The notes under the pieces were generated by a model that saw nothing but the letters and a program-made list of their open reading frames with translations, searched no databases and was not told the origin of the DNA. 64,000 bases of DNA from Macrostomum lignano. Its lineage: Eukaryota. The position numbers and the translations under genes were made by a program. The first letter of the stretch is position 1, and each line of letters opens with the position of its first letter. The stretch lies in assembly GCA_002269645.1 (NCBI GenBank), contig NIVC01001014.1, forward strand, positions 284,565 through 348,564, read 5' to 3'. Positions 39,680 through 59,647 of the stretch are shown piece after piece.

Positions 39680-41480
39680 TCATGCATTTAAACACCTGAG
39701 CTCTTATTCTGAATCATGCATTTAAACATCTGAGCTCTTATTCTGAATCATGCATTTAAACACCTGAGCTATTATTCTGAATCATGCATTTAAACACCTG
39801 AGCTCTTATTCTGAATCATGCATTTAAACACCTGAGCTATTATTCTGAATCATGCATTTAAACACCTGAGCTCTTATTCTGAATCATGCATTTAAACACC
39901 TGAGCTCTTATTCTGAATCATGCATTTAAACACCTGAGCTCTTATTCTGAATCATGCATTTAAACACCTGAGCTATTATTCTGAATCATGCATTTAAACA
40001 CCTGAGCTCTTATTCTGAATCATGCATTTAAACACCTGAGCTCTTATTCTGAATCATGCATTTAAACACCTGAGCTCTTATTCTGAATCATGCATTTAAA
40101 CACCTGAGCTATTATTCTGAATCATGCATTTAAACACCTGAGCTCTTATTCTGAATCATGCATTTAAACACCTGAGCTCTTATTCTGAATCATGCATTTA
40201 AACACCTGAGCTATTATTCTGAATCATGCATTTAAACACCTGAGCTCTTATTCTGAATCATGCATTTAAACACCTGAGCTATTATTCTGAATCATGCATT
40301 TAAACACCTGAGCTATTATTCTGAATCATGCATTTAAACACCTGAGCTATTATTCTGAATCATGCATTTAAACACCTGAGCTCTTATTCTGAATCATGCA
40401 TTTAAACACCTGAGCTCTTATTCTGAATCATGCATTTAAACACCTGAGCTATTATTCTGAATCATGCATTTAAACACCTGAGCTATTATTCTGAATCATG
40501 CATTTAAACACCTGAGCTCTTATTCTGAATCATGCATTTAAACACCTGAGCTCTTATTCTGAATCATGCATTTAAACACCTGAGCTCTTATTCTGAATCA
40601 TGCATTTAAACACCTGAGCTATTATTCTGAATCATGCATTTAAACACCTGAGCTATTATTCTGAATCATGCATTTAAACACCTGAGCTCTTATTCTGAAT
40701 CATGCATTTAAACACCTGAGCTCTTATTCTGAATCATGCATTTAAACACCTGAGCTATTATTCTGAATCATGCATTTAAACACCTGAGCTCTTATTCTGA
40801 ATCATGCATTTAAACACCTGAGCTATTATTCTGAATCATGCATTTAAACACCTGAGCTATTATTCTGAATCATGCATTTAAACACCTGAGCTATTCTGAA
40901 TCATGCATTTAAACACCTGAGCTATTCTGAATCATGCATTTAAACACCTGAGCTCTTATTCTGAATCATGCATTTAAACACCTGAGCTATTCTGAATCAT
41001 GCATTTAAACACCTGAGCTATTCTGAATCATGCATTTAAACACCTGAGCTCTTATTCTGAATCATGCATTTAAACACCTGAGCTCTTATTCTGAATCATG
41101 CATTTAAACACCTGAGCTATTATTCTGAATCATGCATTTAAACACCTGAGCTCTTATTCTGAATCATGCATTTAAACACCTGAGCTCTTATTCTGAATCA
41201 TGCATTTAAACACCTGAGCTATTATTCTGAATCATGCATTTAAACACCTGAGCTCTTATTCTGAATCATGCATTTAAACACCTGAGCTATTATTCTGAAT
41301 CATGCATTTAAACACCTGAGCTATTATTCTGAATCATGCATTTAAACACCTGAGCTATTCTGAATCATGCATTTAAACACCTGAGCTATTCTGAATCATG
41401 CATTTAAACACCTGAGCTCTTATTCTGAATCATGCATTTAAACACCTGAGCTCTTATTCTGAATCATGCATTTAAACAAC
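39680..41480. repeat. 34-bp satellite (TATTCTGAATCATGCATTTAAACACCTGAGCT[C/A]T), ~53 units
   Basis: Highly homogeneous; two single-base variants plus a 31-bp deletion variant; no unique spacers. Confidence 0.97.
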
Positions 41481-41909
41481 TGAGCGCCTATTGGCAGTCT
41501 GAGTTCACACGACCTTGCGTTGCGTCTTATCTTTGCCTCTCCCACCCTAGACGAAGTTTCGTTGCTGAGACTATTTGAATATCGCCTAATAAAACTTATT
41601 AAGCATAACCCCGAAAAGTCTGCTCCAATTCTCTTCAAATAGTGCTGCGCGTATTTGAGGAACCAAGGGACAACACGGAGCAGTCACGATCGGCAAATAT
41701 TCGCATTGCTATGGGATTTAACTGCTCTAAGAATAATATTAGTGTCAAACGCATAAGGAAAAGTCACACACTGGTTTTGATAATTTAGTTTCAAGTCACC
41801 TGACAATTTTTAGAAAGTTCAAAGCTTCGGATCTGAAGTTTGTAAAATTTATCTTTAAAAATACTTCATTGCATCCACTAAGTACGAAATGATAAGGTGT
41901 CACCTAAGA

Positions 41910-42630
41910 TGTGTCCACTAATAAACGGGTTGATTCAAGGTTGTGTCCACTTGTGATCAGGTTGATTCAAGGTTGTGTCCACTGGTGATCAGGTTGATTT
42001 AAGGTTGTGTCCACTGGTGATCAGGTTGATTTAAGGTTGTGTCCACTGGTGATCAGGTTGATTTAAGGTTGTGTCCACTGGTGATCAGGTTGATTCAAGG
42101 TTGTGTCCACTGGTGATCAGGTTGATTTAAGGTTGTGTCCACTGGTGATCAGGTTGATTTAAGGTTGTGTCCACTGGTGATCAGGTTGATTTAAGGTTGT
42201 GTCCGCTGGTGATCTGGTTGGTTCAAGGTTGTGTCCGCTGGTGATCTGGTTGGTTCAAGGTTGTGTCCACTGGTGATCAGGTTGATTTAAGGTTGTGTCC
42301 GCTGGTGATCTGGTTGATTTAAGGTTGTGTCCACTGGTGATCAGGTTGATTTAAGGTTGTGTCCACTGGTGATCAGGTTGATTTAAGGTTGTGTCCACTG
42401 GTGATCAGGTTGATTCAAGGTTGTGTCCACTGGTGATCAGGTTGATTTAAGGTTGTGTCCACTGGTGATCAGGTTGATTTAAGGTTGTGTCCGCTGGTGA
42501 TCTGGTTGGTTCAAGGTTGTGTCCGCTGGTGATCTGGTTGGTTCAAGGTTGTGTCCACTGGTGATCAGGTTGATTTAAGGTTGTGTCCGCTGGTGATCTG
42601 GTTGATTCAAGCTCAAGGTTGTGTCCGCTG
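41910..42630. repeat. 32-bp minisatellite (GGTTGTGTCCACTGGTGATCAGGTTGATTTAA)
   Basis: About 22 units with a duplicated run of variants. Confidence 0.95.
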
Positions 42631-42833
42631 TTGAACGGGGTGTTTCAGAATTGTGTTCGTTGACGCAATGAAATGGTAAAAGTTCTAAATAGCCAAAAAT
42701 ATTAATTTGCAAGAGCCATTTTATTTATACGATTTGCGCAGATTACAAAAACGATCAACTTTGAACTGCACAAAAAATTCAGTCCTCACTAATCCCAGAC
42801 AGTTGACTCAGTCACTCCGTGCTCCATGCCAGC

Positions 42834-43112
42834 TCACTGCTCACCCGAGATGGACACTGCAGCAATACGTCCAAACAGTTCCTTGTCGGGCTTGAGCAGC
42901 AACAGTTTCTCTTCGTGCGAGAACAATCTGGTGTCGTTAACAACTTCGTTTAATGCCCGTCTGAGTTGGTTGATGCGTCTGCGCAGATTTGATACCAGCA
43001 CAGCGTAGCAGAACCCGGCTACGAGACGGAACAGCAGAAGAAGAGCTATCAGCCAAGTGAGCGCCTTGGCCAGCACAGACACCAGAGTGACTAATTGCAT
43101 AGGTAGCATCAT
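42834..43112 (-). CDS. Possible small single-pass membrane protein (92 aa) or first exon
   Basis: Long hydrophobic N-terminal half, then basic NLRRRINQLRRAL helix; possible GTGAGC donor near the end. No family recognised. Confidence 0.3.
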   Translation of the reverse strand: MMLPMQLVTLVSVLAKALTWLIALLLLFRLVAGFCYAVLVSNLRRRINQLRRALNEVVNDTRLFSHEEKLLLLKPDKELFGRIAAVSISGEQ

Positions 43113-43205
43113 ATATAGCTTTTTATATAGGCTTGAGTTTCTTCTCTCTGCTGTTCTATTGCAATTTCGGGGCTGCAGCTTGCAACGTTTTTACCATAGA
43201 CAACT

Positions 43206-43556
43206 CAGGGGGCCGTAGCCCAGCGGTAGCGCAGCTGCTCCGGTGTGCCAGCGACCCAGGCTCGATTCCAAGTGCAGTCACATTAATTTGGGGCTGAATT
43301 GGAATCTCGGCTTGGCTCTGCTCGTGCAATTAGCGGCCTTGAGAGCCAACCCCCCCCCAAGGCGCAGTGAAGTGTACATCCCTAACGATAATATAAAGTT
43401 AAGGCCGCTATGCACTCCTGTGTGAGTGTGTGCGCGCTTGTATGCCTGCTCAGGGGAGTCGGCGGAATGGGCAGTAATGCCTCTCGCCGGTTGTGTGCCT
43501 ATGTCGCTTAAAGTGCGCCAGGGTGCACACAACCCCCCTGCCTCTAATAAAAAAAA
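43206..43556 (+). mobile_element. tRNA-derived SINE, copy 1
   Basis: tRNA-like head GGGGCCGTAGCCCAGCGG...GGCTCGATTCC (A and B boxes), AATAAAAAAAA tail, 14-bp TSD TACCATAGACAACT (43192-43205, 43557-43570); second copy at 57475. Confidence 0.9.
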
Positions 43557-43854
43557 TACCATAGACAACTAAGGAATCTTCAGTATATAGCCAATCGATG
43601 CGAACGGGAGCTTCACAGGGCAAAATTACATATTGGCTTTATAATGCGCATTCTATGGTCAGAATAATGGTCTCGAGGCGAGCAAAGCAAAAGCTCGTTA
43701 ACAAAACATTATTGATCTTAGAGAGAATTGTCCTGCGATTTACACCAATCAATGCAAATCTCCAAGGCACAGAGAGTGTACATGCCTGAAAATTAGAAAG
43801 TTATTACCCTGTGTGAGCGTGTGTATGAGTGCGTTCCTGCGTACAGTATAAGAC

Positions 43855-44529
43855 AGCACCACCATCAGACAGCCACCCCATCAGACAGCCACCCCCATCA
43901 GACAGCCATCCCCACCAGACAGCCACCCCATCAGCCAGCCACCCCATCAGACAGCCACCCCATCAGACAGCCACCCCATCAGACAGCCACCCCATCAGCC
44001 AGCCACCCCATCAGACAGTCACCCCATCAGACAGCCACCCCATCAGACAGCCACCCCATCAGACAGCCACCCCATCAGACAGCCACCCCCAGACAGCCAC
44101 CCCATCAGACAACCACCCCCACCAGACAGCCACCCCATCAGCCAGCCACCCCATCAGACAGCCACCCCATCAGACAGCCACCCCATCAGACAGCCACCCC
44201 ATCAGACAACCACCCCCACCAGACAGCCACCCCATCAGCCAGCCACCCCATCAGACAGCCACCCCATCAGACAGGCACCCCATCAGACAGGCACCCCATC
44301 AGACAGGCACCCCATCAGACAGCCACCCCATCAGACAGCCACCCCCCAGACAGCCACCCCATCAGACAACCACCCCCACCAGACAGCCACCCCCACCAGA
44401 CAGCCATCCCCACCAGCAGACAGCCACTCCATCAGACAGCCACCCCATCAGACAGCCACCCCCATCAGCCAGCCACCCCCATCAGACAGCCATCCCCACC
44501 AGACAGCCACCCCATCAGACAGCCACCCC
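43855..44529. repeat. 16-bp minisatellite (ATCAGACAGCCACCCC) abutting the LINE 3' end
   Basis: About 42 units. Confidence 0.95.
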
Positions 44530-47108
44530 TTTGACTTACTTGACTTAGCTGCAGGGCAGTCCGAAGACGCAGCGGGGAGGCGAGAGTCGCCCATTCCGCT
44601 AAACCCTGGTGACCCGCTTCGGCAATGGTGCGGGGCCAGTCAGGGCGGTCCGCCAGTACGTCCTGCAGCGTTCTCTTCGTTTAGGAAGAAAGAGGCTCGT
44701 CTAGTTGCCCGAAGGAACCGGACGAGCCGTGAGATGTTCTCAGGTCTACAAAAGTCATCGATAGATGGGTTTGGACCGAGGTGGTTAAGCCGCTCCCTGG
44801 TGAAGAACGGGCATTGACAAACGAAATGCTGAGCATCTTCGTTGTCGTACTCGCAAAATGGGCACAGTTCATTCCGGATGTCGCCCCGGAGAAAGCAGTG
44901 CCTAGCGAAGCAACCATGCCCCGTGAGGGTCATAGCAAGAGCCCGGATGTCCTTCCTGCTTTGGTTCAGGAGGACAGTTCGGAGCTTTCGGGATGGACAA
45001 GGGACCGCCGCGCGCGATTGGCGGCAGGTGGTCAGGTTCATCCATCTGTCCCTGTGCAGGGCGGAGGCCCAGGCATCAATGCTGCGATTGATGATGGCCG
45101 CAGGGATTGGAGTCAAGGGCAGAGGTCCCTGAAGGGAGTCGCCGCTCCCTTGCTTTGCTAGCGAATCGGCCAGCTCGTTTCCAGGGAAACCCGCGTGGCC
45201 TGGGATCCATTTGAGCTGGACAGAATTTTTGCGTCCCAGCGTATTGAGCATCCGGACGCAGTCAGAGACCGACCGGGAGGCCGTAGTGGTGTGACAGAGG
45301 GCTAGCAGAGCCGCCTGGCTGTCGAAGTGAAAAACGATAGTTTTACCGGAGGTGTTTTTGCTGCAAAGCTCTGCAGCGCAAGAGCTAATAGCAAGGACCT
45401 CGTTCTGGAAGACAGTAGAGAGTCTTCCAGTGTGCTGGGCACGCGGCCATTGATGAGAATGCAGACCCCAAAGCCGGAGAGACAGCCTTTTAGGGATCCG
45501 TCTGTGTAGCAGTGGACCTCCTGCGGATTCCAGTGGTCGTTAGCCTCCTCTCGAGGAGGAAGAATGACCTTGAATCGAAGACAGAGGTTGAGCGTGCGAG
45601 GTTCCCCGTCCGAAAGGACGTTGAGGCCGCCACTCTCCTGCAGATCTTTGAGACAGAGGTCGGAATGATGCAAAAGCTTGCGCTTAGCCATTGCCCTATG
45701 GGGCTTGAGAGTAATGCCGGTGTCGATGAGACGCTGGGCTGCTGGCTGCCTCACTGCGGACGAAAATGTCCAGTGGAGGCAAATCGAGGAAGGCGTTGAG
45801 GCTGTCGAAGGGAGCAGAGGGCGGGGCGCCCATTATCATTCGACATGAACGCCCCTGCACTCGTTTAAGAGCCTCGAAGCAGGTCTTAATCTGCAGGGCA
45901 CTCGCCCAGATCAGTCCGGCATAGGAGATCGCCGGCCTGACCATAGCAGTGTAGATCCACCAGAGGCGTTTGGGGGTAAGGCCCCAAGTAGTGCCAACCG
46001 CCCTGCGCAGTTGCGCCAGGATCGCGAAGGCCTTTTTAGTCTTGGCATGAACATGCGGGGACCAGTTCAGCCTGTGATCAAGGGTGACCCCAAGACACTT
46101 GACTTGCTTACGGAAGGGGATTTCCTGTCCGTAGAGCGTGAGATGGCGGGATTGCCACTTCGTCCTGCTGGTGAACATGACCACAGCGGTCTTAGTCCCG
46201 GAGAGCTTCAGACCGCATCGGTCCGCCCAACGTTCAGCAGTGTTGATGAAGTTCTGAAGGAGATCACGCAGGGTGTCCGGCGATGGCTCAGAGGCTACCG
46301 CCGTGACATCGTCCGCATAACCGACCTTCAGAATAGGGTTAGGACAGGCGTCCCGTAGGAGCTCGTCGATAACCATGTTCCAGAGAATTGGAGAGAGGAC
46401 ACCACCCTGCGGACAGCCTTTGCAGACAGGAACCGTCCGTTCATGACCTAGCAGGTGTGCCGTAGCAGATCTGTGGCTAATCATGTACATTATCCATCGC
46501 GTGAGATGAGAATGTGTCATTCTCGTTTGTAGAGCCCTTCGAAACGCATCGAAAAGGACGTTGTCAAAGGCTCCCACGATATCCAGGAAGACCGCTAGGG
46601 CATAGCCGTTGCCAAGCACAGCTTTCTCCAGCGTGTCCCGCCCGAAAAGCATGCTGGTTTTTGCTAAGCGGCATGTTCTTTAGTTCCACGGACTGCAGGC
46701 GCCAGAGCACCAGCAGTTCCATCAGTTTGACCATCGAGGAGGTCAAGCTGATTGGTCTAAAGGATTCAACAGAATGGTAGTCCGGGCGGCCGGGCTTAGG
46801 AATGAAAATCACCCTCGCCTCAGTCCACGGCTTCGGGACATAACCAAACGTAATGCAGGCTTTAAGAAGCTTGCACAGGTGCGTAAGGAACCTCTTGCAT
46901 TGGACCGCCTCTCTGATTAGGGCTGGTACAATGCCGTCGGGTCCAGGCGCCTTGTAAGGCTTGAAGGAGTTTGCAGCTTTGATGATGCGCTCCTTCGTGA
47001 TAAAGGAGGAGGCAAGAAACGAACCGCCTTCGGCATGGTCCGAAGGGTCATTTGTGAGAGCCTCGTTGGGGAAGGAGGCTGAAAGCATAAGCTCTAGCGT
47101 CTCCCCAG
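44530..47108 (-). mobile_element. 5'-truncated non-LTR retrotransposon with RT, RNase H and C-terminal CCHC (Loa/R1/I-group-like), frameshifted
   Basis: KAPGPDGI, RPISL, NQHAFRAG, FLDIVGAFD, GCPQGGVLSP, YADD; RNase H YTDGS and WIPGH...GNELADSLAK; CPFC...HFVCQC. At least three frameshifts; (AAGTC)-type tail; 9-bp TSD AGCCACCCC (44521-44529, 47109-47117). No endonuclease or ORF1. Confidence 0.93.
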
Positions 47109-47424
47109 AGCCACCCCACAAGATAGCACCCATTAAAACAAAAGCAAAGTTTTGATTCTAAGCACATATATTATGACCAAAAGTGCATAGTTTCTTTACG
47201 AGTAATTGGTAATTAATATTTGTTTCAGTAAAACTCATTTCTAGAGATATATTTCCAAAACAAAATGCCTATCATTTAAGCGTTGAAGCAAAGAAAGTGA
47301 TGTAATAATAAGAGTAATAAGAGTAATGAAATCCCCTAAATAAATAAGTCTATTTCTGCAAGCGCACCTGCAGCAACTCTATAGGTATAAGTTAGTAAAT
47401 AACGGAATTAATAATTTACTATGG

Positions 47425-49024
47425 CTAATATACGTCGTTACAGAAGTCGGTTTTGCAGCGAATGCAACTGGAAAAAGTGCAGGTTGGACATTTCGGCTCG
47501 CAGTCGCCGCAGCCAGCGCTGACTGTCTGAAAAAAGAATTGAAATTTTGAAATTTGTAGCATTCTACTACTTGTAGTAAAAATGCTAGAAACTTATCTGT
47601 ATATTGTAAGTTACTGAAACATACATGTATAATCATTTTTGTAGCTGATTTTATACATGTACCAAAGATAAGAGAAGTGAGACAGAGAGACTAGAGAGAT
47701 GCCCATTAGAGACAGAGAGATACGTACCCATTAGAGAGACACAGATACCCATTAGAGAGACACAAAGATAATTCAATAGAGAGACGGAGATACCCATTAG
47801 GGAGATAAAGGGATATGCATTAGCGAGACAAAGAGATATACCCATTAGAAAGACAGAGATACCCGAGAGACAGAGAGATACCCATTGGGGAGACAGAGAG
47901 ATACCCATTAGAGAGACAGAGATACCTATTAGAAAGACAGAGAGACCCATTAGATAGACAGAGAAATACCCATTAGAGAGGCGCTCTATCTAATGTTAGA
48001 TTACCCAGCCTTCAATCGTCAGATCAGTACAAAACCCCTGCAGAAGAAGGAGTTCTGTTTTAGCAGAACAAATTTCCTGCTAAGGGAAATTACTCACAGA
48101 GTAGTGCTCCTTCTTGGGATCGAAGAATTGTCCAGAATTCGAATTCGAGGTATGGGTGTAGGTCACCTCGACTTTAACGTGGCATTCGAAAAATTTCCTG
48201 TGACATTCGCCGCGTATAGGCATGGCAGAGGTTGGCCAAATGCCCTGCCGCTTGTAATAGACGCATTTTATCGCCTTAGTCGGCTGCTCTGCGGGCGCGG
48301 GTTCGAGTTCGAGTTTCCTCTTCACTACACTCTACTCCTCCCAGCTACACTCTACTCCTCCTAACTACACTCTACTCCTCCCAACTACACTCTACTCCTA
48401 CCAGCTACACTCTACTCCTCCCAACTACACTGTACTCCTGCCAACTACACTCTACTCCTCCCAACTACACTCTACTCCTCCCAACTACACTCTACTCCTC
48501 CCAACTACACTCTACTCCTCCCAGCTACACTCTACTCCTCCCAACTACACTCTACTCCTCCCAACTACACTCTACTCCTGCCAACTACACTCTACTCCTG
48601 CCAACTACACTCTACTCCTGCCAACTACACTCTACTCCCCCCAGCTACAGTCTACTCCTCTTAACTACACTCTACTCCTCCCAACTACACTCTACTCCTA
48701 CCAGCTACACTCTACTCCTCCCAACTACACTCTACTCCTCCCAACTACACTCTACTCCTACCAGCTACACTCTACTCCTCCCAACTACACTCTACTCCTC
48801 CCAACTACACTCTACTCCTGCCAACTACACTCTACTCCCCCCAGCTACAGTCTACTCCTCTTAACTACACTCTACTCCTCCCAACTGCACCCTTACTTTC
48901 CTCTCAACCACACTCTACTACTCTCAACTATATTTTACTCAAAGCAACTTTAATAATATTCATACTTACGATTGAACAGTAAAAATAATACAGTTATCAC
49001 AACCGTAAACGCTGGTCTGGGCAT
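47425..49024 (-). CDS. Secreted 10-Cys Ly6/uPAR (three-finger)-like protein; exons 49024-48970, 48324-48098, 47526-47425; 127 aa
   Basis: Signal-peptide exon MPRPAFTVVITVLFLLFN with GTAAGT donor (phase 1); exon 2 ...KAIKCVYY...GECHRKFFECHVK... with GTGAGT donor (phase 0); exon 3 TVSAGCGDCEPKCPTCTFSSCIRCKTDFCNDVY-TAG. Ten Cys and the terminal CxxxxCN motif of LU domains. Confidence 0.8.
47650..47985. repeat. ~21-23-bp minisatellite (GAGATACCCATTAGAGAGACA) in intron 2 of the Ly6-like gene
   Basis: Tandem diverged units. Confidence 0.88.
48325..48920. repeat. 20-bp minisatellite (CCAACTACACTCTACTCCTC) filling intron 1 of the Ly6-like gene
   Basis: About 29 units, abutting the splice acceptor. 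Confidence 0.95.
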
Positions 49025-49235
49025 CTGTTGCCAATTAGCTTCTTTTATTAGGCAAAATTTTCTTCTTCCACCCAAGTCAAGATGAAAAGAGCCTTTTCGC
49101 TTTGTTGCTACAAGCTGTAGTTTAACAGCAAAAATGTTAATATTGAGATTTTTTAGACTTTTAGACATTTAGTGTTTTGCAATATTCTATGGTTAAAACC
49201 AAGGTGCTTTATTTTTATCACATCGTATCCTTGGT

Positions 49236-49728
49236 ACTGGCGCCCCTTGGTGCTGGCGCCCCTTGGTGCTGGCGCCCCTTGGTGCTGGCGCCCCTTGGTG
49301 CTGGCGCCCCTTGGTGCTGGCGCCCCTTGGTGCTGGCGCCCCTTGGTGCTGGCGCCCCTTGGTGCTGGCGCCCCTTGGTGCTGGCGCCCCTTGGTGCTGG
49401 CGCCCCTTGGTGCTGGCGCCCCTTGGTGCTGGCGCCCCTTGGTGCTGGCGCCCCTTGGTGCTGGCGCCCCTTGGTGCTGGCGCCCCTTGGTGCTGGCGCC
49501 CCTTGGTGCTGGCGCCCCTTGGTGCTGGCGCCCCTTGGTGCTGGCGCCCCTTGGTGCTGGCGCCCCTTGGTGCTGGCGCCCCTTGGTGCTGGCGCCCCTT
49601 GGTGCTGGCGCCCCTTGGTGCTGGCGCCCCTTGGTGCTGGCGCCCCTTGGTGCTGGCGCCCCTTGGTGCTGGCGCCCCTTGGTGCTGGCGCCCCTTGTTG
49701 CTGGCGCCCCTTGGTGCTTGCGCCCCTT
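49236..49728. repeat. 16-bp GC-rich minisatellite (GGCGCCCCTTGGTGCT), ~30 near-perfect units
   Basis: Direct reading; ~210 bp upstream of the Ly6-like ATG. Confidence 0.97.
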
Positions 49729-51001
49729 GATTAATATTGCATTGCACGACAGGAGTATAATATATATTCAGCCTAGTGACAGTAAGTAAGGGATAATTGC
49801 TACGTCGAATCCCCGATAATTAGAAGTTTTTGTAACTATCATTTTTTACGAATCGGTGATTTTTGATGTACTTTTCACATGACCGAAGCCAAAAGTTAGT
49901 CAGTCAGACAGTCACTGGCACTGCTCAGCAACTTCCTGACTGACAAGGGAGCTTGGAGCATTGTGCAGAGCATGCCAGAGTAAACCCTAATTACATGGTC
50001 GAAAAGAAACGCTCCCTGTCTTGCCCTAACCACGACTAATTCTAAAGTTAGCGAAACAAATATAAAAACGACTTTATACTGCATTAATCGAATTATAAAC
50101 ATTGCGCTTATATCTCGCAAAGAGAGTTTCCAAAAATTCTGGCGGCACAGCACAAGACAAGGCAATAATAAGTCATGGCAAGCAGCAAAAGGAAAAAGGC
50201 ACCCTTGGGCTGCGGCCTAGATGCCTCTTTGGATTGGACCGAGGGCCCGAATCGTGCGCGTGTGCCGTGCGTTTTCTGTCTGTGAGGAGAGGACGGGAGA
50301 GGAGGAAAGGAAAAAAAACTGGGCCGCCTGGCTGCCAGTCAACCCACGGCCCAAGCTTTACTTCAGGTTCAACTGTTCAGGGAGCAGAACACAATCCAGT
50401 CGGCAAAGCCTGTCCAAAAATATTGTGTGTTGTGCAAAAGTTAAAACTCTCCACCTCCTCTCCCTCTCCCCTCAGCATGGATTGGATTGAAACCGGCGCT
50501 TCCCTGGCGCGTATGTACATTCTAGCGGTGGGGAATCACGTGATCAAATTGTACACTAATCCATTGTACAGTGTCAGATAGAGTTTGGAAAAGGGAGAGA
50601 GGGAAAGAGAGAAAAGAGGGGGTGGCGGGGCGCAGTGCTAGCAGGCAACATACACATAACAGATTCTACTTGCCCTTAGTCCACTATCTCACACACGAAC
50701 ACTCCGCCTGCCGACTGAATATATTTTGGCACTGCATTTAAAACACAGAAACTCTTAAATTCATTGGGTTGGCAAAGAAGGCCGCCCCTCGGGCAAGATA
50801 TAATAAATAAAGCGCTTTACTTTTTCAAAGCACATCAAACGAAGTTCTGTGCATTTGTCTGCTTACTCTTCTTTTGTGTTCAGACAAATTTTCGACTAGT
50901 AAGAGTGAAGGAAACGAGAACAGCACTGAAGATTGAAGTTTTAACAATTCTGTCGTTGACTTTAGACATATAGCTTTATTTTAATATTATTAATTATTAC
51001 A

Positions 51002-53751
51002 ATGACGCTAGCAACAACTTGTCGTCGACTGCTGACTCCGGCGGCAACCGCCTTGCGTCGTTACTATTCGCCAATTTCTGATTCGCCTCGCAATCGAGTC
51101 GCTATTCTGGGCGCCTGCGGCGGCCTCGGCCAGCCATTGTCACTAATAATGAAGCGCTCGGAATATATTGCCGAATTGGCGCTATACGACAAAGTGGACA
51201 CCGCCGGCTTGTGCGCCGACCTTAGTCACATCTCGACTAAGGCGGCAATCAAGGGCTACCAGGGTAGCGATCAGCTAGGCGACTGCCTGACTGGCTGCAG
51301 CGTGGTGCTCATGATTGCTGGGATTCGGAGGTGAGGTCGACTAGATTTATATAATTGTTATTGTTACCATAGCTCGTCTATGAACCATCCCTCCAAATAA
51401 TCGGCCTTGCCGCCTCGGCCTCTATATGATTAGTCTATGACCGATTAATCAAACGCCCCAATCTCCCTCTATGACCCACTAATCAAACAGCCCAATCTTC
51501 CTTTCTATGACCTGACTGATTTAGCCAACACCCCAATCTCTATGACCCATTTAACCAACACCCAATCTCCCTCTATAACCCATTAATCAAACAGCCCATG
51601 CAATCTCCCTCTATGACCCACTTAGCCAACACCCCAATCCCTCTATGACCCATTCCTATTTAGCCAACACCCCAATCTCCCTCTATGACCCTTTAGCCAA
51701 CACCCCAATCTCCCTCTATGATCCACTTAGCAACACCCCAATCTCCCTCTATGACCCACTTAGCAAATAGCAACACCCCAATCTCCCTCTATGACCCACT
51801 TAGCCAACACCCCAATCCCTCTATGACCCATTCCTATTTAGCCAACACCCCAATCTCCCTCTATGACCCTTTAGCCAACACCCCAATCTCCCTCTATGAT
51901 CCACTTAGCAACACCCCAATCTCCCTCTATGACCCTTTAGCCAACACCCCAATCTCCCTCTATGACCCACTTAGCCAACACCCCAATCTCCCTCTATGAC
52001 CCACTTAGCCAATACCCCAATCTCCATCTATGACCCATTTAGCCAACACCCCGATCTCCTTTTATGACCCCTTCCACAAAAATCGCAATCTAGCACGCGT
52101 AAATGATAATTATTGAAATGTGAAATCCTAACTCTACCACCTACACCTAATATCTATCAATCACATCATACCCCTGTCAGGCAGCCGGGCATGCACCGTG
52201 ACAGCCTATTCCAACAGAACGCCACCATTGTTGCCGAGCTAACAGACGCCGTTGCTAAGCACTGCCCGAAGGCCCAGCTGTGCATACTCACCAATCCTAT
52301 TAATAGCAACGTGCCCCTAGCTGCTGAGATTCTCAAGCACCGAGGGGTGCACGATCCGCGTCGCTTGTACGGCATCACTACTGTTGACTCTGTGCGAGCT
52401 GACGTAGTCTATGCCAAGTTAACTGGTCACCCGCTTGACAAGGTTTGAGCATGGGAATTTATTAGGGATCTATCATCTTCATCAATGTCCTCTGAAGCTT
52501 CCTCTAGGAGCAGTGAAATCCCATTCCTAATTTCACTATCTTCATCTCGACCCAGCTTCCTGCTGTGAGCAGTTGAGATCCCATCTATCTACCTCATTTT
52601 CATCTCGATCAATTTCAGCTTCCTCTGTGAGCAGTTGAAATCCATCTATCTGCCTCATCTTTGTCTCAATCCCTTCAGCTTCCTCTGTGAGCAACTGAAA
52701 TCCCATTTATCTGCCTCATCTTTATCTCGATCCCTTCAGCTTCCTCTGTGAGCAACTGAAATCCCGTCTATCTGCCTCATCTTTATCTCGATCCATTTCA
52801 GCTTCCTCTGTGAGCAGTTGAAATCCCATCTATCTGCCTCATCTTTATCTCGATCCCTTCAGCTTCCTCTGTGAGCAGTTGAAATCCCATCTATCTGCCT
52901 CATCTTTATCTCGATCCCTTCAGCTTCCTCTGTGAGCAGTTGAAATCCTATCTATCTGCCTCATCTTTATCGCGATCCATTCCAGCTTCCTCTAATCCTC
53001 TGTGAGCAGTTGAAATCCCATCTATCTGCCTCATCTTCATTCTAATCCCTTCCCAGCTTCCTCTGTGAGCAGTTGAGATCCCATCTATCTGCCTCATCTT
53101 CATCTCGATTCCTTTCAGCTTCCCCTGTGAGCAGTTAATATCCCATCTATCTGCCTCATCTTCATCTCGATTCCTTTCAGCTTCCTCTGTAAGCAATTGA
53201 ATTCCCATCCCCCTTATCTTCATCTCAATCCAGCTTCCTGTGTTCCGGGAGATCTCATCTACATCATTCAATTCAGAGATCCCTAACCTCCAATCCAGGT
53301 GAGCGTGCCCGTACTAGGCGGTCACAGCGGCCACAGTCTGGTGCCGGCCTTCAGCCAGGCCCAGCCACATAGCCGCCTGTCACCCGAGGATGTCCGCCGC
53401 CTCACTGAATCCGTACGCGGCGCCGCCGACGCCATCGTCGCTGTGAAAGCCGGCGGCGGTTCGGCGACGCTCTCCGTAGCCGCCGCCGCTCATCGTTTCG
53501 TCAACTCGGTGCTGCTAGCCCTGGACGGCCGGCAGAACATTATTGAATCGGCTTTTGTCGAGTCCGACGCCATGCCCGATCTGCCATTCTTCTCCTGCCC
53601 GTTGCTGCTTGGCCAGAACGGCGTCGAACGAAATTTAGGCGTCGGCCAACTGTCCGAGTACGAGGCCGAACTGATGAAAGCAGCCGTGGCCGAGCTTCGA
53701 GTCCAGATTGAAAAGGGCCAGGAATTTGGCTTGGCCTGGGCAAAGCGATGA
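51002..53751 (+). CDS. MDH2: Mitochondrial-type malate dehydrogenase, divergent paralog; exons 51002-51330, 52181-52442, 53299-53751; 347 aa
   Basis: Arg-rich transit peptide; VAILGACGGLGQPLSL, ADLSHI, RRQPGMHRDSLF, TNPINS, DSVRA, LGGHSG, KAGGGSATLS. GT-AG introns in phase. Confidence 0.92.
51440..52080. repeat. ~34-bp minisatellite (TAGCCAACACCCCAATCTCCCTCTATGACCCACT) in MDH intron 1
   Basis: Tandem units. Confidence 0.92.
52500..53250. repeat. ~61-bp minisatellite (CAGCTTCCTCTGTGAGCAGTTGAAATCCCATCTATCTGCCTCATCTTTATCTCGATCCCTT) in MDH intron 2
   Basis: About 12 units. Confidence 0.92.
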
Positions 53752-53929
53752 TTTATTTATGTATTTATGAATATACATATTGATTTAGTTTAGATCTAAT
53801 TTTCATAGTCTAGCGGGTGCGGTGATTGAACTAATAAATCCATACATTCGCCCGTGTGAACTGCTGGACTGAATGAACTGAGCTAGACCGACTCCTGCTC
53901 TCATTCTGCCCAATCTCTCCCTTACCCTC

Positions 53930-54320
53930 ACCCACTGTCTCCCTTGCCCCTCACCCCCACTCTGTCTCCCATACCCCTCACCCCCACTCTGTCCCCCTTA
54001 CCCCTCACCCCCACTCTGTCCCCCTTACCCCTCACCCCCACTCTGTCTCCCTTACCCCTCACCCCCACTGTCTCCCTTACCCCTCACCCCCACTCTGTCC
54101 CCCTTACCCCTCACCCCCACTCTGTCCCCCTTACCCCTCACCCCCACTCTGTCTCCCTTACCCCTCACCCCCACTGTCTCCCTTACCCCTCACCCCCACT
54201 CTGTCCCCTTACCCCTCACCCCCACTCTGTCTCCCTTACCCCTCACCCCCACTGTCTCCCTTACCCCTCACCCCCACTCTGTCTCCCTTACCCCTCACCC
54301 CACTCCGTCTCCCTTACGCC
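53930..54320. repeat. 27-bp C-rich minisatellite (CCCCACTCTGTCTCCCTTACCCCTCAC)
   Basis: Tandem units. Confidence 0.93.
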
Positions 54321-55149
54321 TCAATCTGGCACCAATATCATCCCAGTGTCGCTATTTAGAATTAAATTACGTGCTTGAACAGAATTTGTCAATGAAGCCA
54401 ACGACTTATTTTTCTTTGAAGCTTTTCAACACGAATTAATCCGATTGGGTAAAGAATTTCTTAAATTATAGCAGTTATTTTAACTCAAAAACCAATTCGT
54501 ACAAGTTTTTTTGCTGCTTTGAAATCGTCGGCCCCTTTTATTTTCTCAGTTGTTCGATTCAAAAATGTTTTTACTTTATCTCACTTCTCCCTTATCTAAC
54601 TACCTAGCTACTGCAGTGACTCATAATAATGCAGCCTTTATCTGTTATAATCAACTATATTCTCAAACTGCTAACAGTGGTATGTGTGTGTGTTTGTGTG
54701 TGTGTATCCACCGTCAAAAAAATCTTTTTATGGGGCTAAATCGTGTGATCTGTGAACATTAAAAACTCAACTGTTTACTATTTTATAAGGTTTTCATGTT
54801 CTGCGACTTACTACTAACTTGATAAAACCGTAGTAAGTAGCAAGCTTCGCTTCAGGGTTACGTCTTCTGCAAGTCTAAAAAACACGGCATTAGTAGCAAC
54901 TACAATTTTGAATCAATCTACGAGTATCTTTGAACAGCCTGGCAACGAGTTTGTTTATCTTAGATACGGTGCATTTTTAAATCAGTCTAAAATGTACCAG
55001 CTTGTTCAAGGTATTGTGACCCAAACAGTCGGCCCCAAATACACATGTAATGAATTGTATTAGAAACATTGAGAGATGTAATGTCTCTCCGTTGCAGTAC
55101 CAACTCAATTTTTGTCTATTTTTATTTTTATTTTTCTCAATTCACCAGC

Positions 55150-55966: not shown

Positions 55967-56791
55967 CTAAACGAGCGGGTCGGAGCACTGGCAGACCACC
56001 GGGAAGCTGTCCGTGTCCGGATAGTCGGACAGCTTGCGCTGAAGCAGCACGCCGGCATTCTCGGCGGCCAAATTGTTGTTCGGCTGGTCGGCGTCCCACA
56101 CGGCCGACCGAACTGGCAGCCGCGGCGGGCTGGGACCAGCGCAGGGATGCCAGTGCCAGCCGCCGGCAGGCTCCGAGGAGTTTGGCAGCTGGACGGCGCC
56201 AGTCCAAACCGGGTTGCCGATGGCGCCGCCGTAGATGACCAACGCCGATTCGATGTCGTCGTCGTTGTCCAGCTGGGCCGGTCTGGTCAACTCGCCGTCA
56301 GCTAAGCACCTGGCCGCCTGCGTGGACCAGTTTCCAACGGAGGTGTATAGTTTGTACTTGTAGCCATGGTAACCGCCGGTCGTGTTAGCGGCTACTCGAT
56401 AATCAGGCGGGCAGGTCGCGCCGGCTCGAATGTACACGGTGACGTTGATGGCGTCAGTGGGCACCTCACCGACTGTGCAGTTTGATCTGCGGACTGCGGC
56501 GCTGCAGCGGCTCCACGCGTAGAGGCTGCACCGACCGCGGGCGGCATCGAAACTGAACGCCCTACAATCGGCCTGCGCTGAGCAGGCCACGGCGCAGGGT
56601 CGCTCGTCGGAGTAGACAGCCGCCAGCCGTCTGATGTACTCGGAGGCCACGCACAGCAGCGGCAGACGGACGGGGCTGTAGATTTTGCCGCCGGCATCGC
56701 GGCTGTTGCAGCTGCTGGCTGTTTCCATGGCAACTAGAGTCGCTAGTAGAGCGGTAAGCATTAGCGACATTTTTAACGATGACGCTCTCAT
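55967..56791 (-). CDS. Secreted PAN/apple + C-type lectin domain protein, intronless, 274 aa
   Basis: Signal peptide; PAN motif CAVACSAQADCRAFSF...CSLY; CTLD motifs CP, W..Q..RC, VWTG, WHW, WDADQPNN and terminal VVCQ. Confidence 0.85.
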   Translation of the reverse strand: MRASSLKMSLMLTALLATLVAMETASSCNSRDAGGKIYSPVRLPLLCVASEYIRRLAAVYSDERPCAVACSAQADCRAFSFDAARGRCSLYAWSRCSAAVRRSNCTVGEVPTDAINVTVYIRAGATCPPDYRVAANTTGGYHGYKYKLYTSVGNWSTQAARCLADGELTRPAQLDNDDDIESALVIYGGAIGNPVWTGAVQLPNSSEPAGGWHWHPCAGPSPPRLPVRSAVWDADQPNNNLAAENAGVLLQRKLSDYPDTDSFPVVCQCSDPLV

Positions 56792-58186: not shown

Positions 58187-59647
58187 TCAACAGCAGCTGT
58201 ACAGCAGCGAGCATGATCGACAGTTGCCCAGCTGATGCGGACATGACGAACTTGGAGGCCAATGCCACAGCGCCGCTGCCATTAGCCTGGCAGGCCATGG
58301 CTTCGCAGGCCCGCAGCACCGCTTCTGCTGCTGTTGCTCCATCAGCTGCGGCTGCAACCCCAAGCTGGGCATCAGAAAGTCCACGAACAGCTGAAACGAA
58401 GCTTCCGGCTTCTCAATCGGGGTGCTGTGACCCGCGCCAGACACCGACCTGTACCGAATGGTGAAGGCGTTCAAGGACGTCTCAGAGCCGCCCACCTGAA
58501 CGGAAGCGGCGCCGAACATGCACTGGCAGTAGTACCAGGAGTAGCGGTTGCCCTGTAGCGGCCAGGTCATATTGTCGACGAAGCCCGCCGTGGCCAGGTA
58601 AGGCAACAGGTAGTCTAGGTTGCCATTGTACAGCAGTACATCAATTTTGCTCCTGTTGAGCAGCAGTAGCTGATGGGTCAGGGCCTCATTGCGGAAATCG
58701 TAGCTTGTGAAGATGCGGCCGCTGCAGATGTGGTAGCGCTTGGCCTGAGGCGACACGCCCAAAGCGCGACGCACGTCCGGCCTCTGCAGGTAGTGCTCCA
58801 TGGCGGTGGTGTTCAAACACCTGTACGAGTCGTTGTAGCCCAGGATGTTGTGATGGCAGAGGCTCTCAACGTTGTACTCATTGAAAGTCGGATCGGGATC
58901 TTTGAACTGTTTCTCAGTCACGGGCATCAGACCCATGAAGTAGGCGAACTCGGCCCTGGCTGCTAGCATCGCCTCCCGACCCATAAAGTAGCCGTTGCCA
59001 ATGGCGACGCCTCGAAGTCGAAGGCCGTCTGGTCTTGACAACCGTTCATCTGCCAGAAGCGCCTCGGCCAGCAGCGGCAGGTAGACTCCGGCGTAGCTCT
59101 CGCCGGTCAGGTAGAAGTTCCTGGCCCGATACTCTGGGAACAGCAGCAGGAACTGACGCAGCGCAAGGATGTTGTCGCGAGTGGTGCTCCCATCGTTCCA
59201 GCGAAATTTGCTGGACGTCCGGGCCTTGCCGTAGCTAAAGCCGACACCTGCCGGCGATTCCAGGTAGAGCATGTTGGCCACACGGTTCCAGGCCCAGGGA
59301 TTGTGCACCAGCTGGGCCCGGTCGTTCACCAGGAACGGCCCATTGGTGGTCAGCAGGCCGCCGATGGACGAGCAACCGGGGCCGCCGTTCAACCACAGGA
59401 CCAGCGGCGCCTCTTCCGGCGGCTTCTCCGAGCTCTCCACCAGCCAGTAGAACAGGCGGCTGTTCGACTGCTCAGCCGCCTGCAGGTAGCCGGAGTATTG
59501 GCCAAATCGTGGACCCATCGTCGGCTGGCCTGGCAGGTTGACGATGCGGTGCCTCTGAGCACTGAACGGTTGCGACATCAGCGATAGCGACATCGTCAAC
59601 CACAGCAACAGCAGCTGGAGATTGTGGTGGCTCAGATGAAGTGCCAT
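58187..59647 (-). CDS. Serine carboxypeptidase, family S10 (cathepsin A-like), intronless; true C-terminus probably in another frame ending at 58164
   Basis: Signal peptide; QYSGYL, LFYW, PLVLWLNGGPGCSS, NMLYLESPAGVGFSY, GESYAG (Ser), YNGNLD (Asp), GAGH (His). Confidence 0.92.
   Translation of the reverse strand: MALHLSHHNLQLLLLWLTMSLSLMSQPFSAQRHRIVNLPGQPTMGPRFGQYSGYLQAAEQSNSRLFYWLVESSEKPPEEAPLVLWLNGGPGCSSIGGLLTTNGPFLVNDRAQLVHNPWAWNRVANMLYLESPAGVGFSYGKARTSSKFRWNDGSTTRDNILALRQFLLLFPEYRARNFYLTGESYAGVYLPLLAEALLADERLSRPDGLRLRGVAIGNGYFMGREAMLAARAEFAYFMGLMPVTEKQFKDPDPTFNEYNVESLCHHNILGYNDSYRCLNTTAMEHYLQRPDVRRALGVSPQAKRYHICSGRIFTSYDFRNEALTHQLLLLNRSKIDVLLYNGNLDYLLPYLATAGFVDNMTWPLQGNRYSWYYCQCMFGAASVQVGGSETSLNAFTIRYRSVSGAGHSTPIEKPEASFQLFVDFLMPSLGLQPQLMEQQQQKRCCGPAKPWPARLMAAALWHWPPSSSCPHQLGNCRSCSLLYSCC

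What the first reader, a model, noticed from the sequence alone, without database searches (positions are those of the whole stretch)
47425..49024. Cryptic secreted three-finger (Ly6/uPAR-like) gene invisible to the ORF track
Three small exons separated by minisatellite-filled introns splice in phase into a 127-aa protein: signal peptide, short pro-like segment with KRK, then ten Cys ending CIRCKTDFCNDVY-stop. It stops right after the CN motif with no GPI signal, so it is soluble like SLURP/toxin-type three-finger proteins rather than membrane-bound like CD59/Ly6. Cys spacing is atypical (long loop after Cys3; C-xx-C-xxx-C-xx-C cluster). Candidate secreted modulator, toxin or mucus protein.
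Basis: partly seen in the sequence, partly recalled or inferred. Interest (0 to 1): 0.72.

Follow-up and report, generated by a model that had tools for sequence, protein, structure and literature searches.

The report
Small secreted cysteine-rich flatworm gene

Summary
The window is Macrostomum lignano DNA. Window 41425-55138 is 100% identical to GenBank contig NIVC01001014.1 of assembly Mlig_3_7. The gene is real and already annotated from RNA-seq-derived transcripts as BOX15_Mlig003445g1 (PAA73392.1). UniProt holds it as A0A1I8GI60. Both public proteins join ...LLFN to QQPTK, so exon 2 starts at 48288, not 48324. The protein is therefore 115 aa, not 127, and the 'KRK pro-segment' is intron.

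The product has a signal peptide and a roughly 91-aa basic mature chain with ten Cys. It ends CKTDFCNDVY with no GPI tail. Across three genomic copies, 7 of 9 coding differences are synonymous, which indicates purifying selection.

The three-finger (LU) assignment is unproven:
- Pfam gives no LU match.
- hhalign against a CD59 profile pairs only the 7-residue C-terminal motif (probability 1.5%).
- Two AlphaFold2 runs failed (pLDDT 43 and 40), and Foldseek found nothing.

Several LU hallmarks are present: Cys at mature position 3, C-x6-C, C-x4-C-N and a phase-1 signal-peptide exon. Others are not: CxxC at the N-terminus, adjacent CC, and an intron at the loop-2 tip. No homologues were found outside M. 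lignano, and no expression data were found. Interest is low to moderate.

The parts
49025..49138 (-). 5' UTR as far as the annotated transcript reaches. It is open in frame, which is why GenBank gives a 153-aa 5'-partial ORF. It contains no upstream ATG.
   Evidence: P0003 begins NIFAVKLQ..., which translates window 49138 downward. No ATG lies in 49138-49025.
48970..49024 (-). Coding exon 1, 55 nt, ending in phase 1. It holds the start codon and most of the signal peptide (MPRPAFTVVITVLFLLFN + 1 nt). The donor is GTAAGT.
   Evidence: The same residues are found in P0001 and P0003.
48289..48969 (-). Intron 1, 681 nt. It is mostly a 20-bp minisatellite (48324-48930, about 30 copies, 89% matches).
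   Evidence: TRF. Junction FN|QQPTK in P0001 and P0003. Acceptor context CCCGCGCCCGCAG|AG. Copy L002 has a 6-nt indel inside these 36 nt.
48098..48288 (-). Coding exon 2, 191 nt. It holds the end of the signal peptide and mature residues 1-58, including Cys 3, 23 and 30. The donor is GTGAGT, phase 0.
47527..48097 (-). Intron 2, 571 nt, with a degenerate 21-23-bp minisatellite (47684-47980). The acceptor is TTCTTTTTTCAG.
   Evidence: The YS|TVS junction appears in all annotated proteins, including the 75-aa models of the other two copies.
47425..47526 (-). Coding exon 3, 102 nt including the TAG stop. It holds mature residues 59-91 with seven Cys (C-x2-C-x3-C-x2-C-x4-C-x2-C-x4-C-N-D-V-Y). It is 100% identical in all three genomic copies.

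Best explanation
This is a genuine, transcribed, three-exon Macrostomum lignano gene on the minus strand. Its coding sequence is 49024-48970, 48288-48098 and 47526-47425. It is already public as BOX15_Mlig003445g1 / A0A1I8GI60.

It encodes a 115-aa precursor. An N-terminal signal peptide (hydrophobic core at residues 5-17, likely cleavage after Ala24) would send it into the ER. The roughly 91-aa, 10.4-kDa, mildly basic chain would then fold around five disulfides and be released as a soluble extracellular protein, because it has no membrane anchor or GPI signal. The most likely mode of action is that of a small disulfide-stabilised extracellular binding protein: a ligand, modulator or defence/gland product.

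A divergent three-finger (LU-like) topology is the leading structural model. I put it at about 40%, and it is not demonstrated.

Shown: the exons, the junctions as given by RNA-derived public models, the three conserved copies, and the excess of synonymous changes. Inferred: signal-peptide cleavage, secretion, disulfide formation, fold and function.
For: - Window 41425-55138 is 100% identical over 13,714 nt to NIVC01001014.1. The annotated gene maps to 49138-47425.
- The Mlig_3_7 annotation was built from RNA-seq (StringTie/TACO/TBONE/TransDecoder), according to PMC5730564.
- An independent UniProt model gives the same 115-aa protein.
- Three genomic copies (window, L001, L002) differ at 9 CDS sites. 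Seven are synonymous. The 2 replacements (V9L, L13F) are hydrophobic-for-hydrophobic in the signal-peptide core. The mature part has 3 differences, all synonymous.
- The binomial P for 7 or more synonymous out of 9 is 4e-4 to 4e-3.
- A hydrophobic N-terminus, a -3/-1 site after A24, 10 Cys, pI 8.4 and the tail NDVY. AF2 is confident only for the N-terminal helix.
Against: - I could inspect no RNA-seq reads directly. The junction evidence comes only through the public protein models.
- Signal-peptide cleavage comes from a hand rule, not from SignalP.
- No expression site or function is known. Seven papers' supplements were checked, three of which held no supplementary text, and the gene ID was not found.
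- The fold is unresolved.
Confidence: 0.8

Rival explanations
1. One reading: the mature protein is a bona fide Ly6/uPAR (three-finger) domain, soluble like SLURP-type proteins. Cys3-Cys30, Cys23-Cys64, Cys67-Cys79 and Cys82-Cys87 would be the four core bridges, with an extra Cys71-Cys74 bridge in loop 3.
For: - The mature N-terminus is I-K-C, with Cys at position 3.
- The C-x6-C spacing between Cys23 and Cys30, C-x4-C-N at the end, a 91-residue length and ten Cys.
- CKTDFCN aligns with CD59 CKKDLCN, 5 of 7 identical.
- The gene has three coding exons, with the signal peptide on its own exon ending in phase 1, as in archetypal LU genes (PMC6600238).
- Extra loop-3 disulfides have precedent in the TGF-beta receptor 2 ectodomain.
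- The low-confidence AF2 model places strands at mature residues 2-6, 18-24 and 29-32.
Against: - No Pfam LU-type family is reported at E<=10.
- hhalign probability is 1.5% over 7 columns only.
- N-terminal LxCxxC is absent (IKCVYY), and CC is replaced by C-x2-C (against the motif definitions).
- Loop 2 would be 33 residues long.
- Intron 2 is phase 0 and lies 6 residues before the Cys that would close loop 2, not at its tip.
- AF2 pLDDT is 40-43, and the best Foldseek E-value is 6.5.
Confidence: 0.4
2. A secreted cysteine-rich protein with a different, possibly novel fold: a beta-rich N-terminal half carrying three Cys, followed by a compact C-terminal knot built from three CxxC pairs. The C-x4-C-N ending would then be coincidental.
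For: - Seven of the ten Cys are packed into the last 24 residues as C-x2-C-x3-C-x2-C-x4-C-x2-C-x4-C, which is unlike the LU consensus.
- There is no detectable similarity to any family or solved structure.
- Apart from the 7-residue C-terminal motif, the only similarity signal from any search is a sub-threshold 11-residue match caused by CxxC spacing.
Against: The same data cannot exclude LU. The position-3 Cys, the C-x6-C spacing, the terminal CN and the exon layout would all have to be coincidence.
Confidence: 0.4
3. A 4Fe-4S ferredoxin-type metal-binding protein, as in the automatic UniProt name.
For: UniRef names it '4Fe-4S ferredoxin-type domain-containing protein'. There are weak Fer4 hits on CGDCEPKCPTC.
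Against: - The Fer4 hits have E-values of 0.19-0.68 and scores of 10-12 bits, against cut-offs of 21-25. They cover only 11 residues.
- The spacing is C-x2-C-x3-C-x2-C rather than the ferredoxin C-x2-C-x2-C-x3-C-P (my own knowledge).
- A signal peptide and an even count of ten Cys point to an oxidised extracellular protein.
Confidence: 0.03
4. The reader's 127-aa form exists as a minor isoform through the alternative acceptor at 48324.
For: 48324 is one of only two in-frame acceptors that keep the frame open. The 36 nt stay in frame in all three copies, because the L002 indel is 6 nt.
Against: Neither public model uses it. Its upstream tract is purine-rich, with pyrimidine fraction 0.30, and it is simply the last unit of the minisatellite.
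Confidence: 0.1
5. The locus is transcribed but not translated, so the ORF is an annotation artefact.
For: It is short and has no homologues outside the species.
Against: The excess of synonymous changes across three copies. The first AUG of the transcript opens the ORF. The protein has a signal peptide and an even Cys count.
Confidence: 0.05

Closest known systems
Ly6/uPAR (LU, three-finger) domain proteins, soluble single-domain type (SLURP-like). CD59 was the reference actually compared here. SmLy6B of Schistosoma mansoni is the flatworm example named in PMC6600238.
   Same: - Signal peptide plus one domain of about 90 residues with ten Cys.
- Cys at mature position 3.
- C-x6-C spacing.
- Terminal C-K-x-D-x-C-N followed by only three residues, so a soluble form.
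- A three-coding-exon gene whose signal-peptide exon ends in phase 1.
   Different: - No second Cys of LxCxxC.
- C-x2-C where LU has CC.
- Two extra Cys in what would be loop 3.
- A very long loop 2.
- Intron 2 is not at the loop-2 tip and is phase 0.
- No Pfam or HH similarity beyond 7 residues, and the fold is not confirmed.
TGF-beta receptor type 2 ectodomain (a divergent LU fold)
   Same: It shows that LU folds tolerate extra, non-consensus disulfides in loop 3 (PMC6600238).
   Different: It is the extracellular part of a transmembrane kinase. No sequence similarity was detected here.
4Fe-4S ferredoxin-type domain (the automatic UniProt label)
   Same: A run of closely spaced CxxC motifs.
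   Different: The match is below every Pfam cut-off and covers only 11 residues. The protein has a signal peptide and an extracellular character.
Lineage-restricted small secreted cysteine-rich proteins of flatworm gland cells, for example prostate/seminal-fluid and adhesive-gland transcripts described in M. lignano (my own knowledge, not tested)
   Same: Small, with a signal peptide, cysteine-rich, no homologues outside the genus, and present in several near-identical copies.
   Different: No expression data link this gene to any gland. The gene ID was not found in the supplements I could read.

Membership tests
Ly6/uPAR (LU) three-finger domain | Significant match to an LU-type profile (Pfam UPAR_LY6, Toxin_TOLIP, QVR and similar) | tested here: not met
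   hmmscan of the 127-aa protein, the mature 91-aa chain and the C-terminal 31 aa at E<=10 gave no LU family. hhalign against a primate CD59 profile gave probability 1.5% over 7 columns. LU domains are short and divergent, so a miss does not exclude the fold.
Ly6/uPAR (LU) three-finger domain | 60-90 residues with the consensus Cys pattern (10 plesiotypic Cys bonded 1-5, 2-3, 4-6, 7-8, 9-10; N-terminal LxCxxC; C-terminal CCxxxxCN), as given in PMC6600238 and PMC6893729 | tested here: not met
   The mature chain is 91 aa with Cys at 3, 23, 30, 64, 67, 71, 74, 79, 82 and 87. It has I-x-C but no CxxC at the N-terminus. It has C-x2-C-x4-C-N instead of CC-x4-C-N. Two extra Cys lie in the would-be loop 3. 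The pattern can be mapped onto the 8-Cys core plus one extra bridge, but it is not the consensus.
Ly6/uPAR (LU) three-finger domain | Asn immediately after the last Cys | tested here: met
   ...DFC87-N88-DVY-stop. Feature definition.
Ly6/uPAR (LU) three-finger domain | Gene layout: one signal-peptide exon plus two exons for the domain, phase-1 boundaries, and the internal intron at the tip of loop 2 (PMC6600238) | tested here: inconclusive
   There are three coding exons, and exon 1 (55 nt) ends in phase 1, so that part is met. Intron 2 is phase 0 and falls between mature residues 58 and 59, six residues before Cys64 rather than at the middle of the 33-residue loop, so that part is not met. 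Signal-peptide exons ending in phase 1 are common in secreted proteins generally.
Ly6/uPAR (LU) three-finger domain | Three-finger beta-sheet fold | tested here: inconclusive
   AlphaFold2 without an alignment gave pLDDT 43.0 / pTM 0.23 for the 115-aa precursor and 40.4 / 0.21 for the mature chain. Foldseek against PDB gave a best E-value of 6.5. No homologues were available to build an alignment.
Ly6/uPAR (LU) three-finger domain | Disulfide connectivity of the LU core | not testable with these tools
   This needs mass-spectrometric disulfide mapping or a solved structure.
Soluble (non-GPI) subclass of LU proteins | No C-terminal hydrophobic GPI-attachment signal after the CN motif | tested here: met
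   The stop comes three codons after Asn88. It is the same in all annotated proteins and in all three genomic copies.
4Fe-4S ferredoxin-type domain | Match to Fer4 profiles above threshold | tested here: not met
   Fer4 scored 10.3-12 bits (cut-off 21.1) and Fer4_2 scored 11.2 bits (cut-off 24.5), over 11 residues only.

The most novel reading that the evidence does not exclude
The protein is a flatworm-specific, soluble three-finger protein of an undescribed subtype. The canonical CC would be split into C-x2-C, the loop-1 bridge lost, an extra bridge gained at the tip of loop 3, and loop 2 unusually long. It would be made by a gland cell type as a secreted modulator, for example of mating partners, prey or microbes.
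Probability: 0.3. Interest if true: 0.4.

Novelty: new member of a known kind. Interest (0 to 1): 0.2.

Why it matters
If the three-finger reading were confirmed, it would add a divergent soluble LU variant from a free-living, genetically tractable flatworm. It would also extend the known tolerance of that fold: a split CC motif and an extra loop-3 bridge.

The practical results as they stand are modest:
- The gene is already public.
- The UniProt name ('4Fe-4S ferredoxin-type') is almost certainly a pattern artefact.
- The two 75-aa GenBank models of the sister copies are 5'-truncated, because an intact signal-peptide exon lies upstream of both.
- The first-stage model needs a 36-nt correction.

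Tried and rejected
- **Pfam** on the full, mature and C-terminal sequences gave nothing except sub-threshold Fer4.
- **PDB sequence search** at E<=10 gave nothing.
- **Paralogue search** by tblastn in the window gave only the three exons themselves.
- **Word-indexed search** of 5.8 billion proteins found only the M. lignano cluster.
- **Exhaustive HMMER** against 1.84 billion representatives found only the protein itself. The four other hits are translated tandem repeats and were rejected.
- **AlphaFold2** was run twice, on the precursor and on the mature chain. Both runs had low confidence. Foldseek on the model found nothing, as expected from such a model.
- **A broad LU profile** could not be built. 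A CD59 query returned only 13 primate clusters. This shows that the protein collection is thin for animals, so 'no homologues' is weak evidence. hhalign against that narrow profile matched only the CKxDxCN motif.
- **Direct RNA contig evidence**: an exact look-up of the 115-aa protein found nothing on record.
- **Expression data**: the gene ID was absent from the full text of the library and from the supplements of PMC5816591, PMC12896417, PMC5730564 and PMC12732829. No supplement text is held for PMC12435804, PMC11398382 or PMC8629364.
- **The ferredoxin label** was considered and rejected.

Full report
**Observation**

An ATG lies at 49024, and a 55-nt first exon ends at a GTAAGT donor. A second exon ends at 48098 before GTGAGT. 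A third exon, 47526-47425, follows TTTTTTCAG and ends TGT AAC GAC GTA TAT TAG.

Tandem Repeats Finder confirms that both introns are largely minisatellite. Intron 1 has a 20-bp unit in about 30 copies at 48324-48930. Intron 2 has a degenerate 21-23-bp unit at 47684-47980. No ORF of 100 aa or more on that strand covers the gene.

**Identity of the DNA and public annotation**

A search of 5.8 billion proteins returned one cluster, from Macrostomum lignano. Its members are:
- UniRef A0A1I8GI60, 115 aa, automatically named '4Fe-4S ferredoxin-type domain-containing protein'
- GenBank PAA73392.1, BOX15_Mlig003445g1, a 153-aa 5'-partial ORF
- GenBank PAA83186.1 and PAA92775.1, genes g2 and g3, 75 aa each

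The contig that carries g1 is 100% identical over 13,714 nt to window 41425-55138. The window is therefore part of NIVC01001014.1 of assembly Mlig_3_7. By the coordinate offset it is probably the last 64 kb of that contig, though only the 13.7 kb were checked. The annotated gene spans window 49138-47425.

According to the genome paper, the GenBank annotation was derived from RNA-seq and a de novo transcriptome. The pipeline was StringTie, TACO, TBONE and TransDecoder (PMC5730564). The gene is therefore not cryptic in the public record.

**Corrected gene model**

Both the UniProt and the GenBank g1 proteins read ...VLFLLFN-QQPTKAIKC.... Exon 1 therefore joins to 48288 (acceptor CCCGCGCCCGCAG|AG), not to 48324.

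These are the only two in-frame acceptors that keep the frame open. The annotated one has a pyrimidine fraction of 0.61 upstream. In copy L002 the 36 nt in question carry a 6-nt unit-number change.

The precursor is thus 115 aa, and the 'pro-like segment with KRK' is intronic. A minor 127-aa isoform cannot be excluded without reads. The start codon is the first ATG of the annotated transcript. The YS|TVS junction and the stop are confirmed by all the models.

**Evidence that it is a functional coding gene**

Two further copies, L001 and L002, lie on other contigs and have the same neighbour, an Ldh/Mdh-family gene. Exon 1 with its signal peptide is intact upstream of both. The 75-aa GenBank models that start at the internal Met are therefore truncated.

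Over the 348-nt CDS the three copies differ at nine sites. Seven are synonymous. The two replacements (V9L, L13F) are hydrophobic swaps inside the signal-peptide core. The mature part has three differences, all synonymous. With about 21% of sites synonymous, P for 7 or more of 9 is 4e-4. Allowing 30% gives 4e-3. Non-repeat flanking and intronic pieces differ by about 3-9%.

**The protein**

- Residues 5-17 form a strongly hydrophobic core, preceded by Arg.
- The only good -3/-1 site in range is after Ala24, which gives a mature N-terminus of IKC.
- The mature chain is 91 aa and 10.4 kDa, with pI 8.4.
- Cys lie at positions 3, 23, 30, 64, 67, 71, 74, 79, 82 and 87. The spacings are 19, 6, 33, 2, 3, 2, 4, 2 and 4.
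- The chain ends C-N-D-V-Y, with no hydrophobic tail.

Secretion as a soluble, disulfide-bonded protein is therefore the natural inference. It remains an inference.

**Is it a three-finger protein?**

The LU criteria were taken from the literature (PMC6600238; PMC6893729):
- 60-90 residues
- ten consensus Cys, bonded 1-5, 2-3, 4-6, 7-8 and 9-10
- N-terminal LxCxxC
- C-terminal CCxxxxCN with an invariant Asn
- a three-exon gene with phase-1 boundaries, the internal intron at the tip of loop 2

Features that are met:
- the size and the Cys number
- I-x-C at the N-terminus
- a C-x6-C pair
- C-x4-C-N at the end
- a soluble C-terminus
- a separate signal-peptide exon ending in phase 1

CD59's CKKDLCN aligns with CKTDFCN.

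Features that are not met:
- the second Cys of CxxC is absent
- CC is replaced by C-x2-C
- two Cys are extra, in what would be loop 3
- loop 2 would be 33 residues long
- intron 2 is phase 0 and lies six residues before Cys64, not at the loop tip

Sequence tests fail. Pfam gives no LU family at E<=10. The PDB sequence search gives nothing. hhalign probability is 1.5%.

Fold tests are uninformative. AF2 gave pLDDT 43.0 and 40.4, and the best Foldseek E-value was 6.5. The low-confidence mature model does place beta strands at residues 2-6, 18-24 and 29-32, but that carries little weight.

I put the three-finger fold at roughly 40%. A different fold with a CxxC-rich C-terminal knot is about equally likely.

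**The ferredoxin label**

The label comes from an 11-residue, sub-threshold resemblance of CGDCEPKCPTC to Fer4 profiles (10-12 bits against cut-offs of 21-25). It sits badly with a signal peptide, and I reject it.

**Taxonomic spread**

An exhaustive HMMER scan of 1.84 billion representatives found only the protein itself. The four other hits are translated tandem repeats.

A control query with human CD59 returned only 13 primate clusters. The collection is therefore sparse for animals. 'Orphan' here means only 'no relative in these libraries'.

**Context**

- Downstream on the same strand (44640-47133) lie frame-broken reverse-transcriptase and RNase H ORFs of a non-LTR retrotransposon.
- Upstream, a very regular 16-bp minisatellite (49229-49729, 31 copies, 99% matches) sits between this gene and a divergently oriented Ldh/Mdh-family gene (about 51002-53751, + strand). 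That gene's span also holds minisatellites.
- Elsewhere the window carries 14-3-3, LIM, PAN-domain and S10 carboxypeptidase ORFs.

No paralogue of the gene is in the window. This is unlike the clustered arrangement that PMC6600238 describes as common for LU genes.

**Mechanism, novelty and score**

The best-supported account is a small secreted, disulfide-rich, soluble extracellular protein under purifying selection. It probably acts by binding a partner. Its fold is possibly a divergent three-finger, and its site of expression is unknown.

The gene model is already public. Any novelty would lie only in recognising a divergent LU variant, which remains unproven. LU proteins are already known from flatworms (SmLy6B), so even a confirmed assignment would be a modest addition. 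Interest is 0.2.

Noticed in passing
window 44640-47133 (- strand): Three consecutive ORFs with Pfam RVT_1 (two ORFs) and RNase_H matches, interrupted by frame breaks. This is a decayed non-LTR retrotransposon that begins about 290 nt downstream of the gene's stop codon.
   Followed up: partly
window 49229-49729: A very regular 16-bp minisatellite (CCTTGGTGCTGGCGCC, 31 copies, 99% matches) about 90 nt upstream of the 5' end of the annotated transcript. It lies in the intergenic space shared with the divergent Ldh/Mdh-family gene, and it creates several spurious ORFs of 150-200 aa on both strands.
   Followed up: no
window about 51002-53751 (+ strand): An annotated 347-aa Ldh_1_N/Ldh_1_C (lactate/malate dehydrogenase family) gene. 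Its span contains 33-bp and 61-bp minisatellite arrays (51434-52070, 52496-52993). It is the conserved neighbour of all three copies of the gene.
   Followed up: partly
L001 5101-5155 and L002 5333-5387: The two sister copies are annotated in GenBank as 75-aa proteins that start at an internal Met (PAA83186.1, PAA92775.1). An intact exon 1 with start codon and signal peptide lies upstream of both, so those models look 5'-truncated.
   Followed up: yes
window 48289-48324, compared with L002 about 5906-5935: The AACTCG unit just upstream of the true acceptor is present twice in the window and in L001, but once in L002 (a 6-nt indel).
   Followed up: partly
window 42834-43136 (- strand): An annotated 100-aa product with a hydrophobic, transmembrane-like stretch (…LTWLIALLLLFRLVAGFCYAVLV…) and no Pfam hit on record. 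Counterparts lie beside the other two copies.
   Followed up: no
window 1001-1720 (-), 23262-23945 (+), 55967-56791 (-), 58187-59647 (-): Long ORFs or exons with clear Pfam matches: 14-3-3 (E 1e-99), LIM (E 7e-30), a PAN domain (E 7e-7) and serine carboxypeptidase S10 (E 3e-96). These are ordinary animal genes.
   Followed up: partly
window 47993-48364 (+ strand): A 123-aa ATG ORF runs antisense to exon 2. There is no evidence that it is anything but a by-product of the coding strand.
   Followed up: no
protein databases: A human CD59 query retrieved only 13 primate clusters from the 5.8-billion-protein collection. Negative homology results for animal genes from this tool should therefore be read cautiously.
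   Followed up: yes
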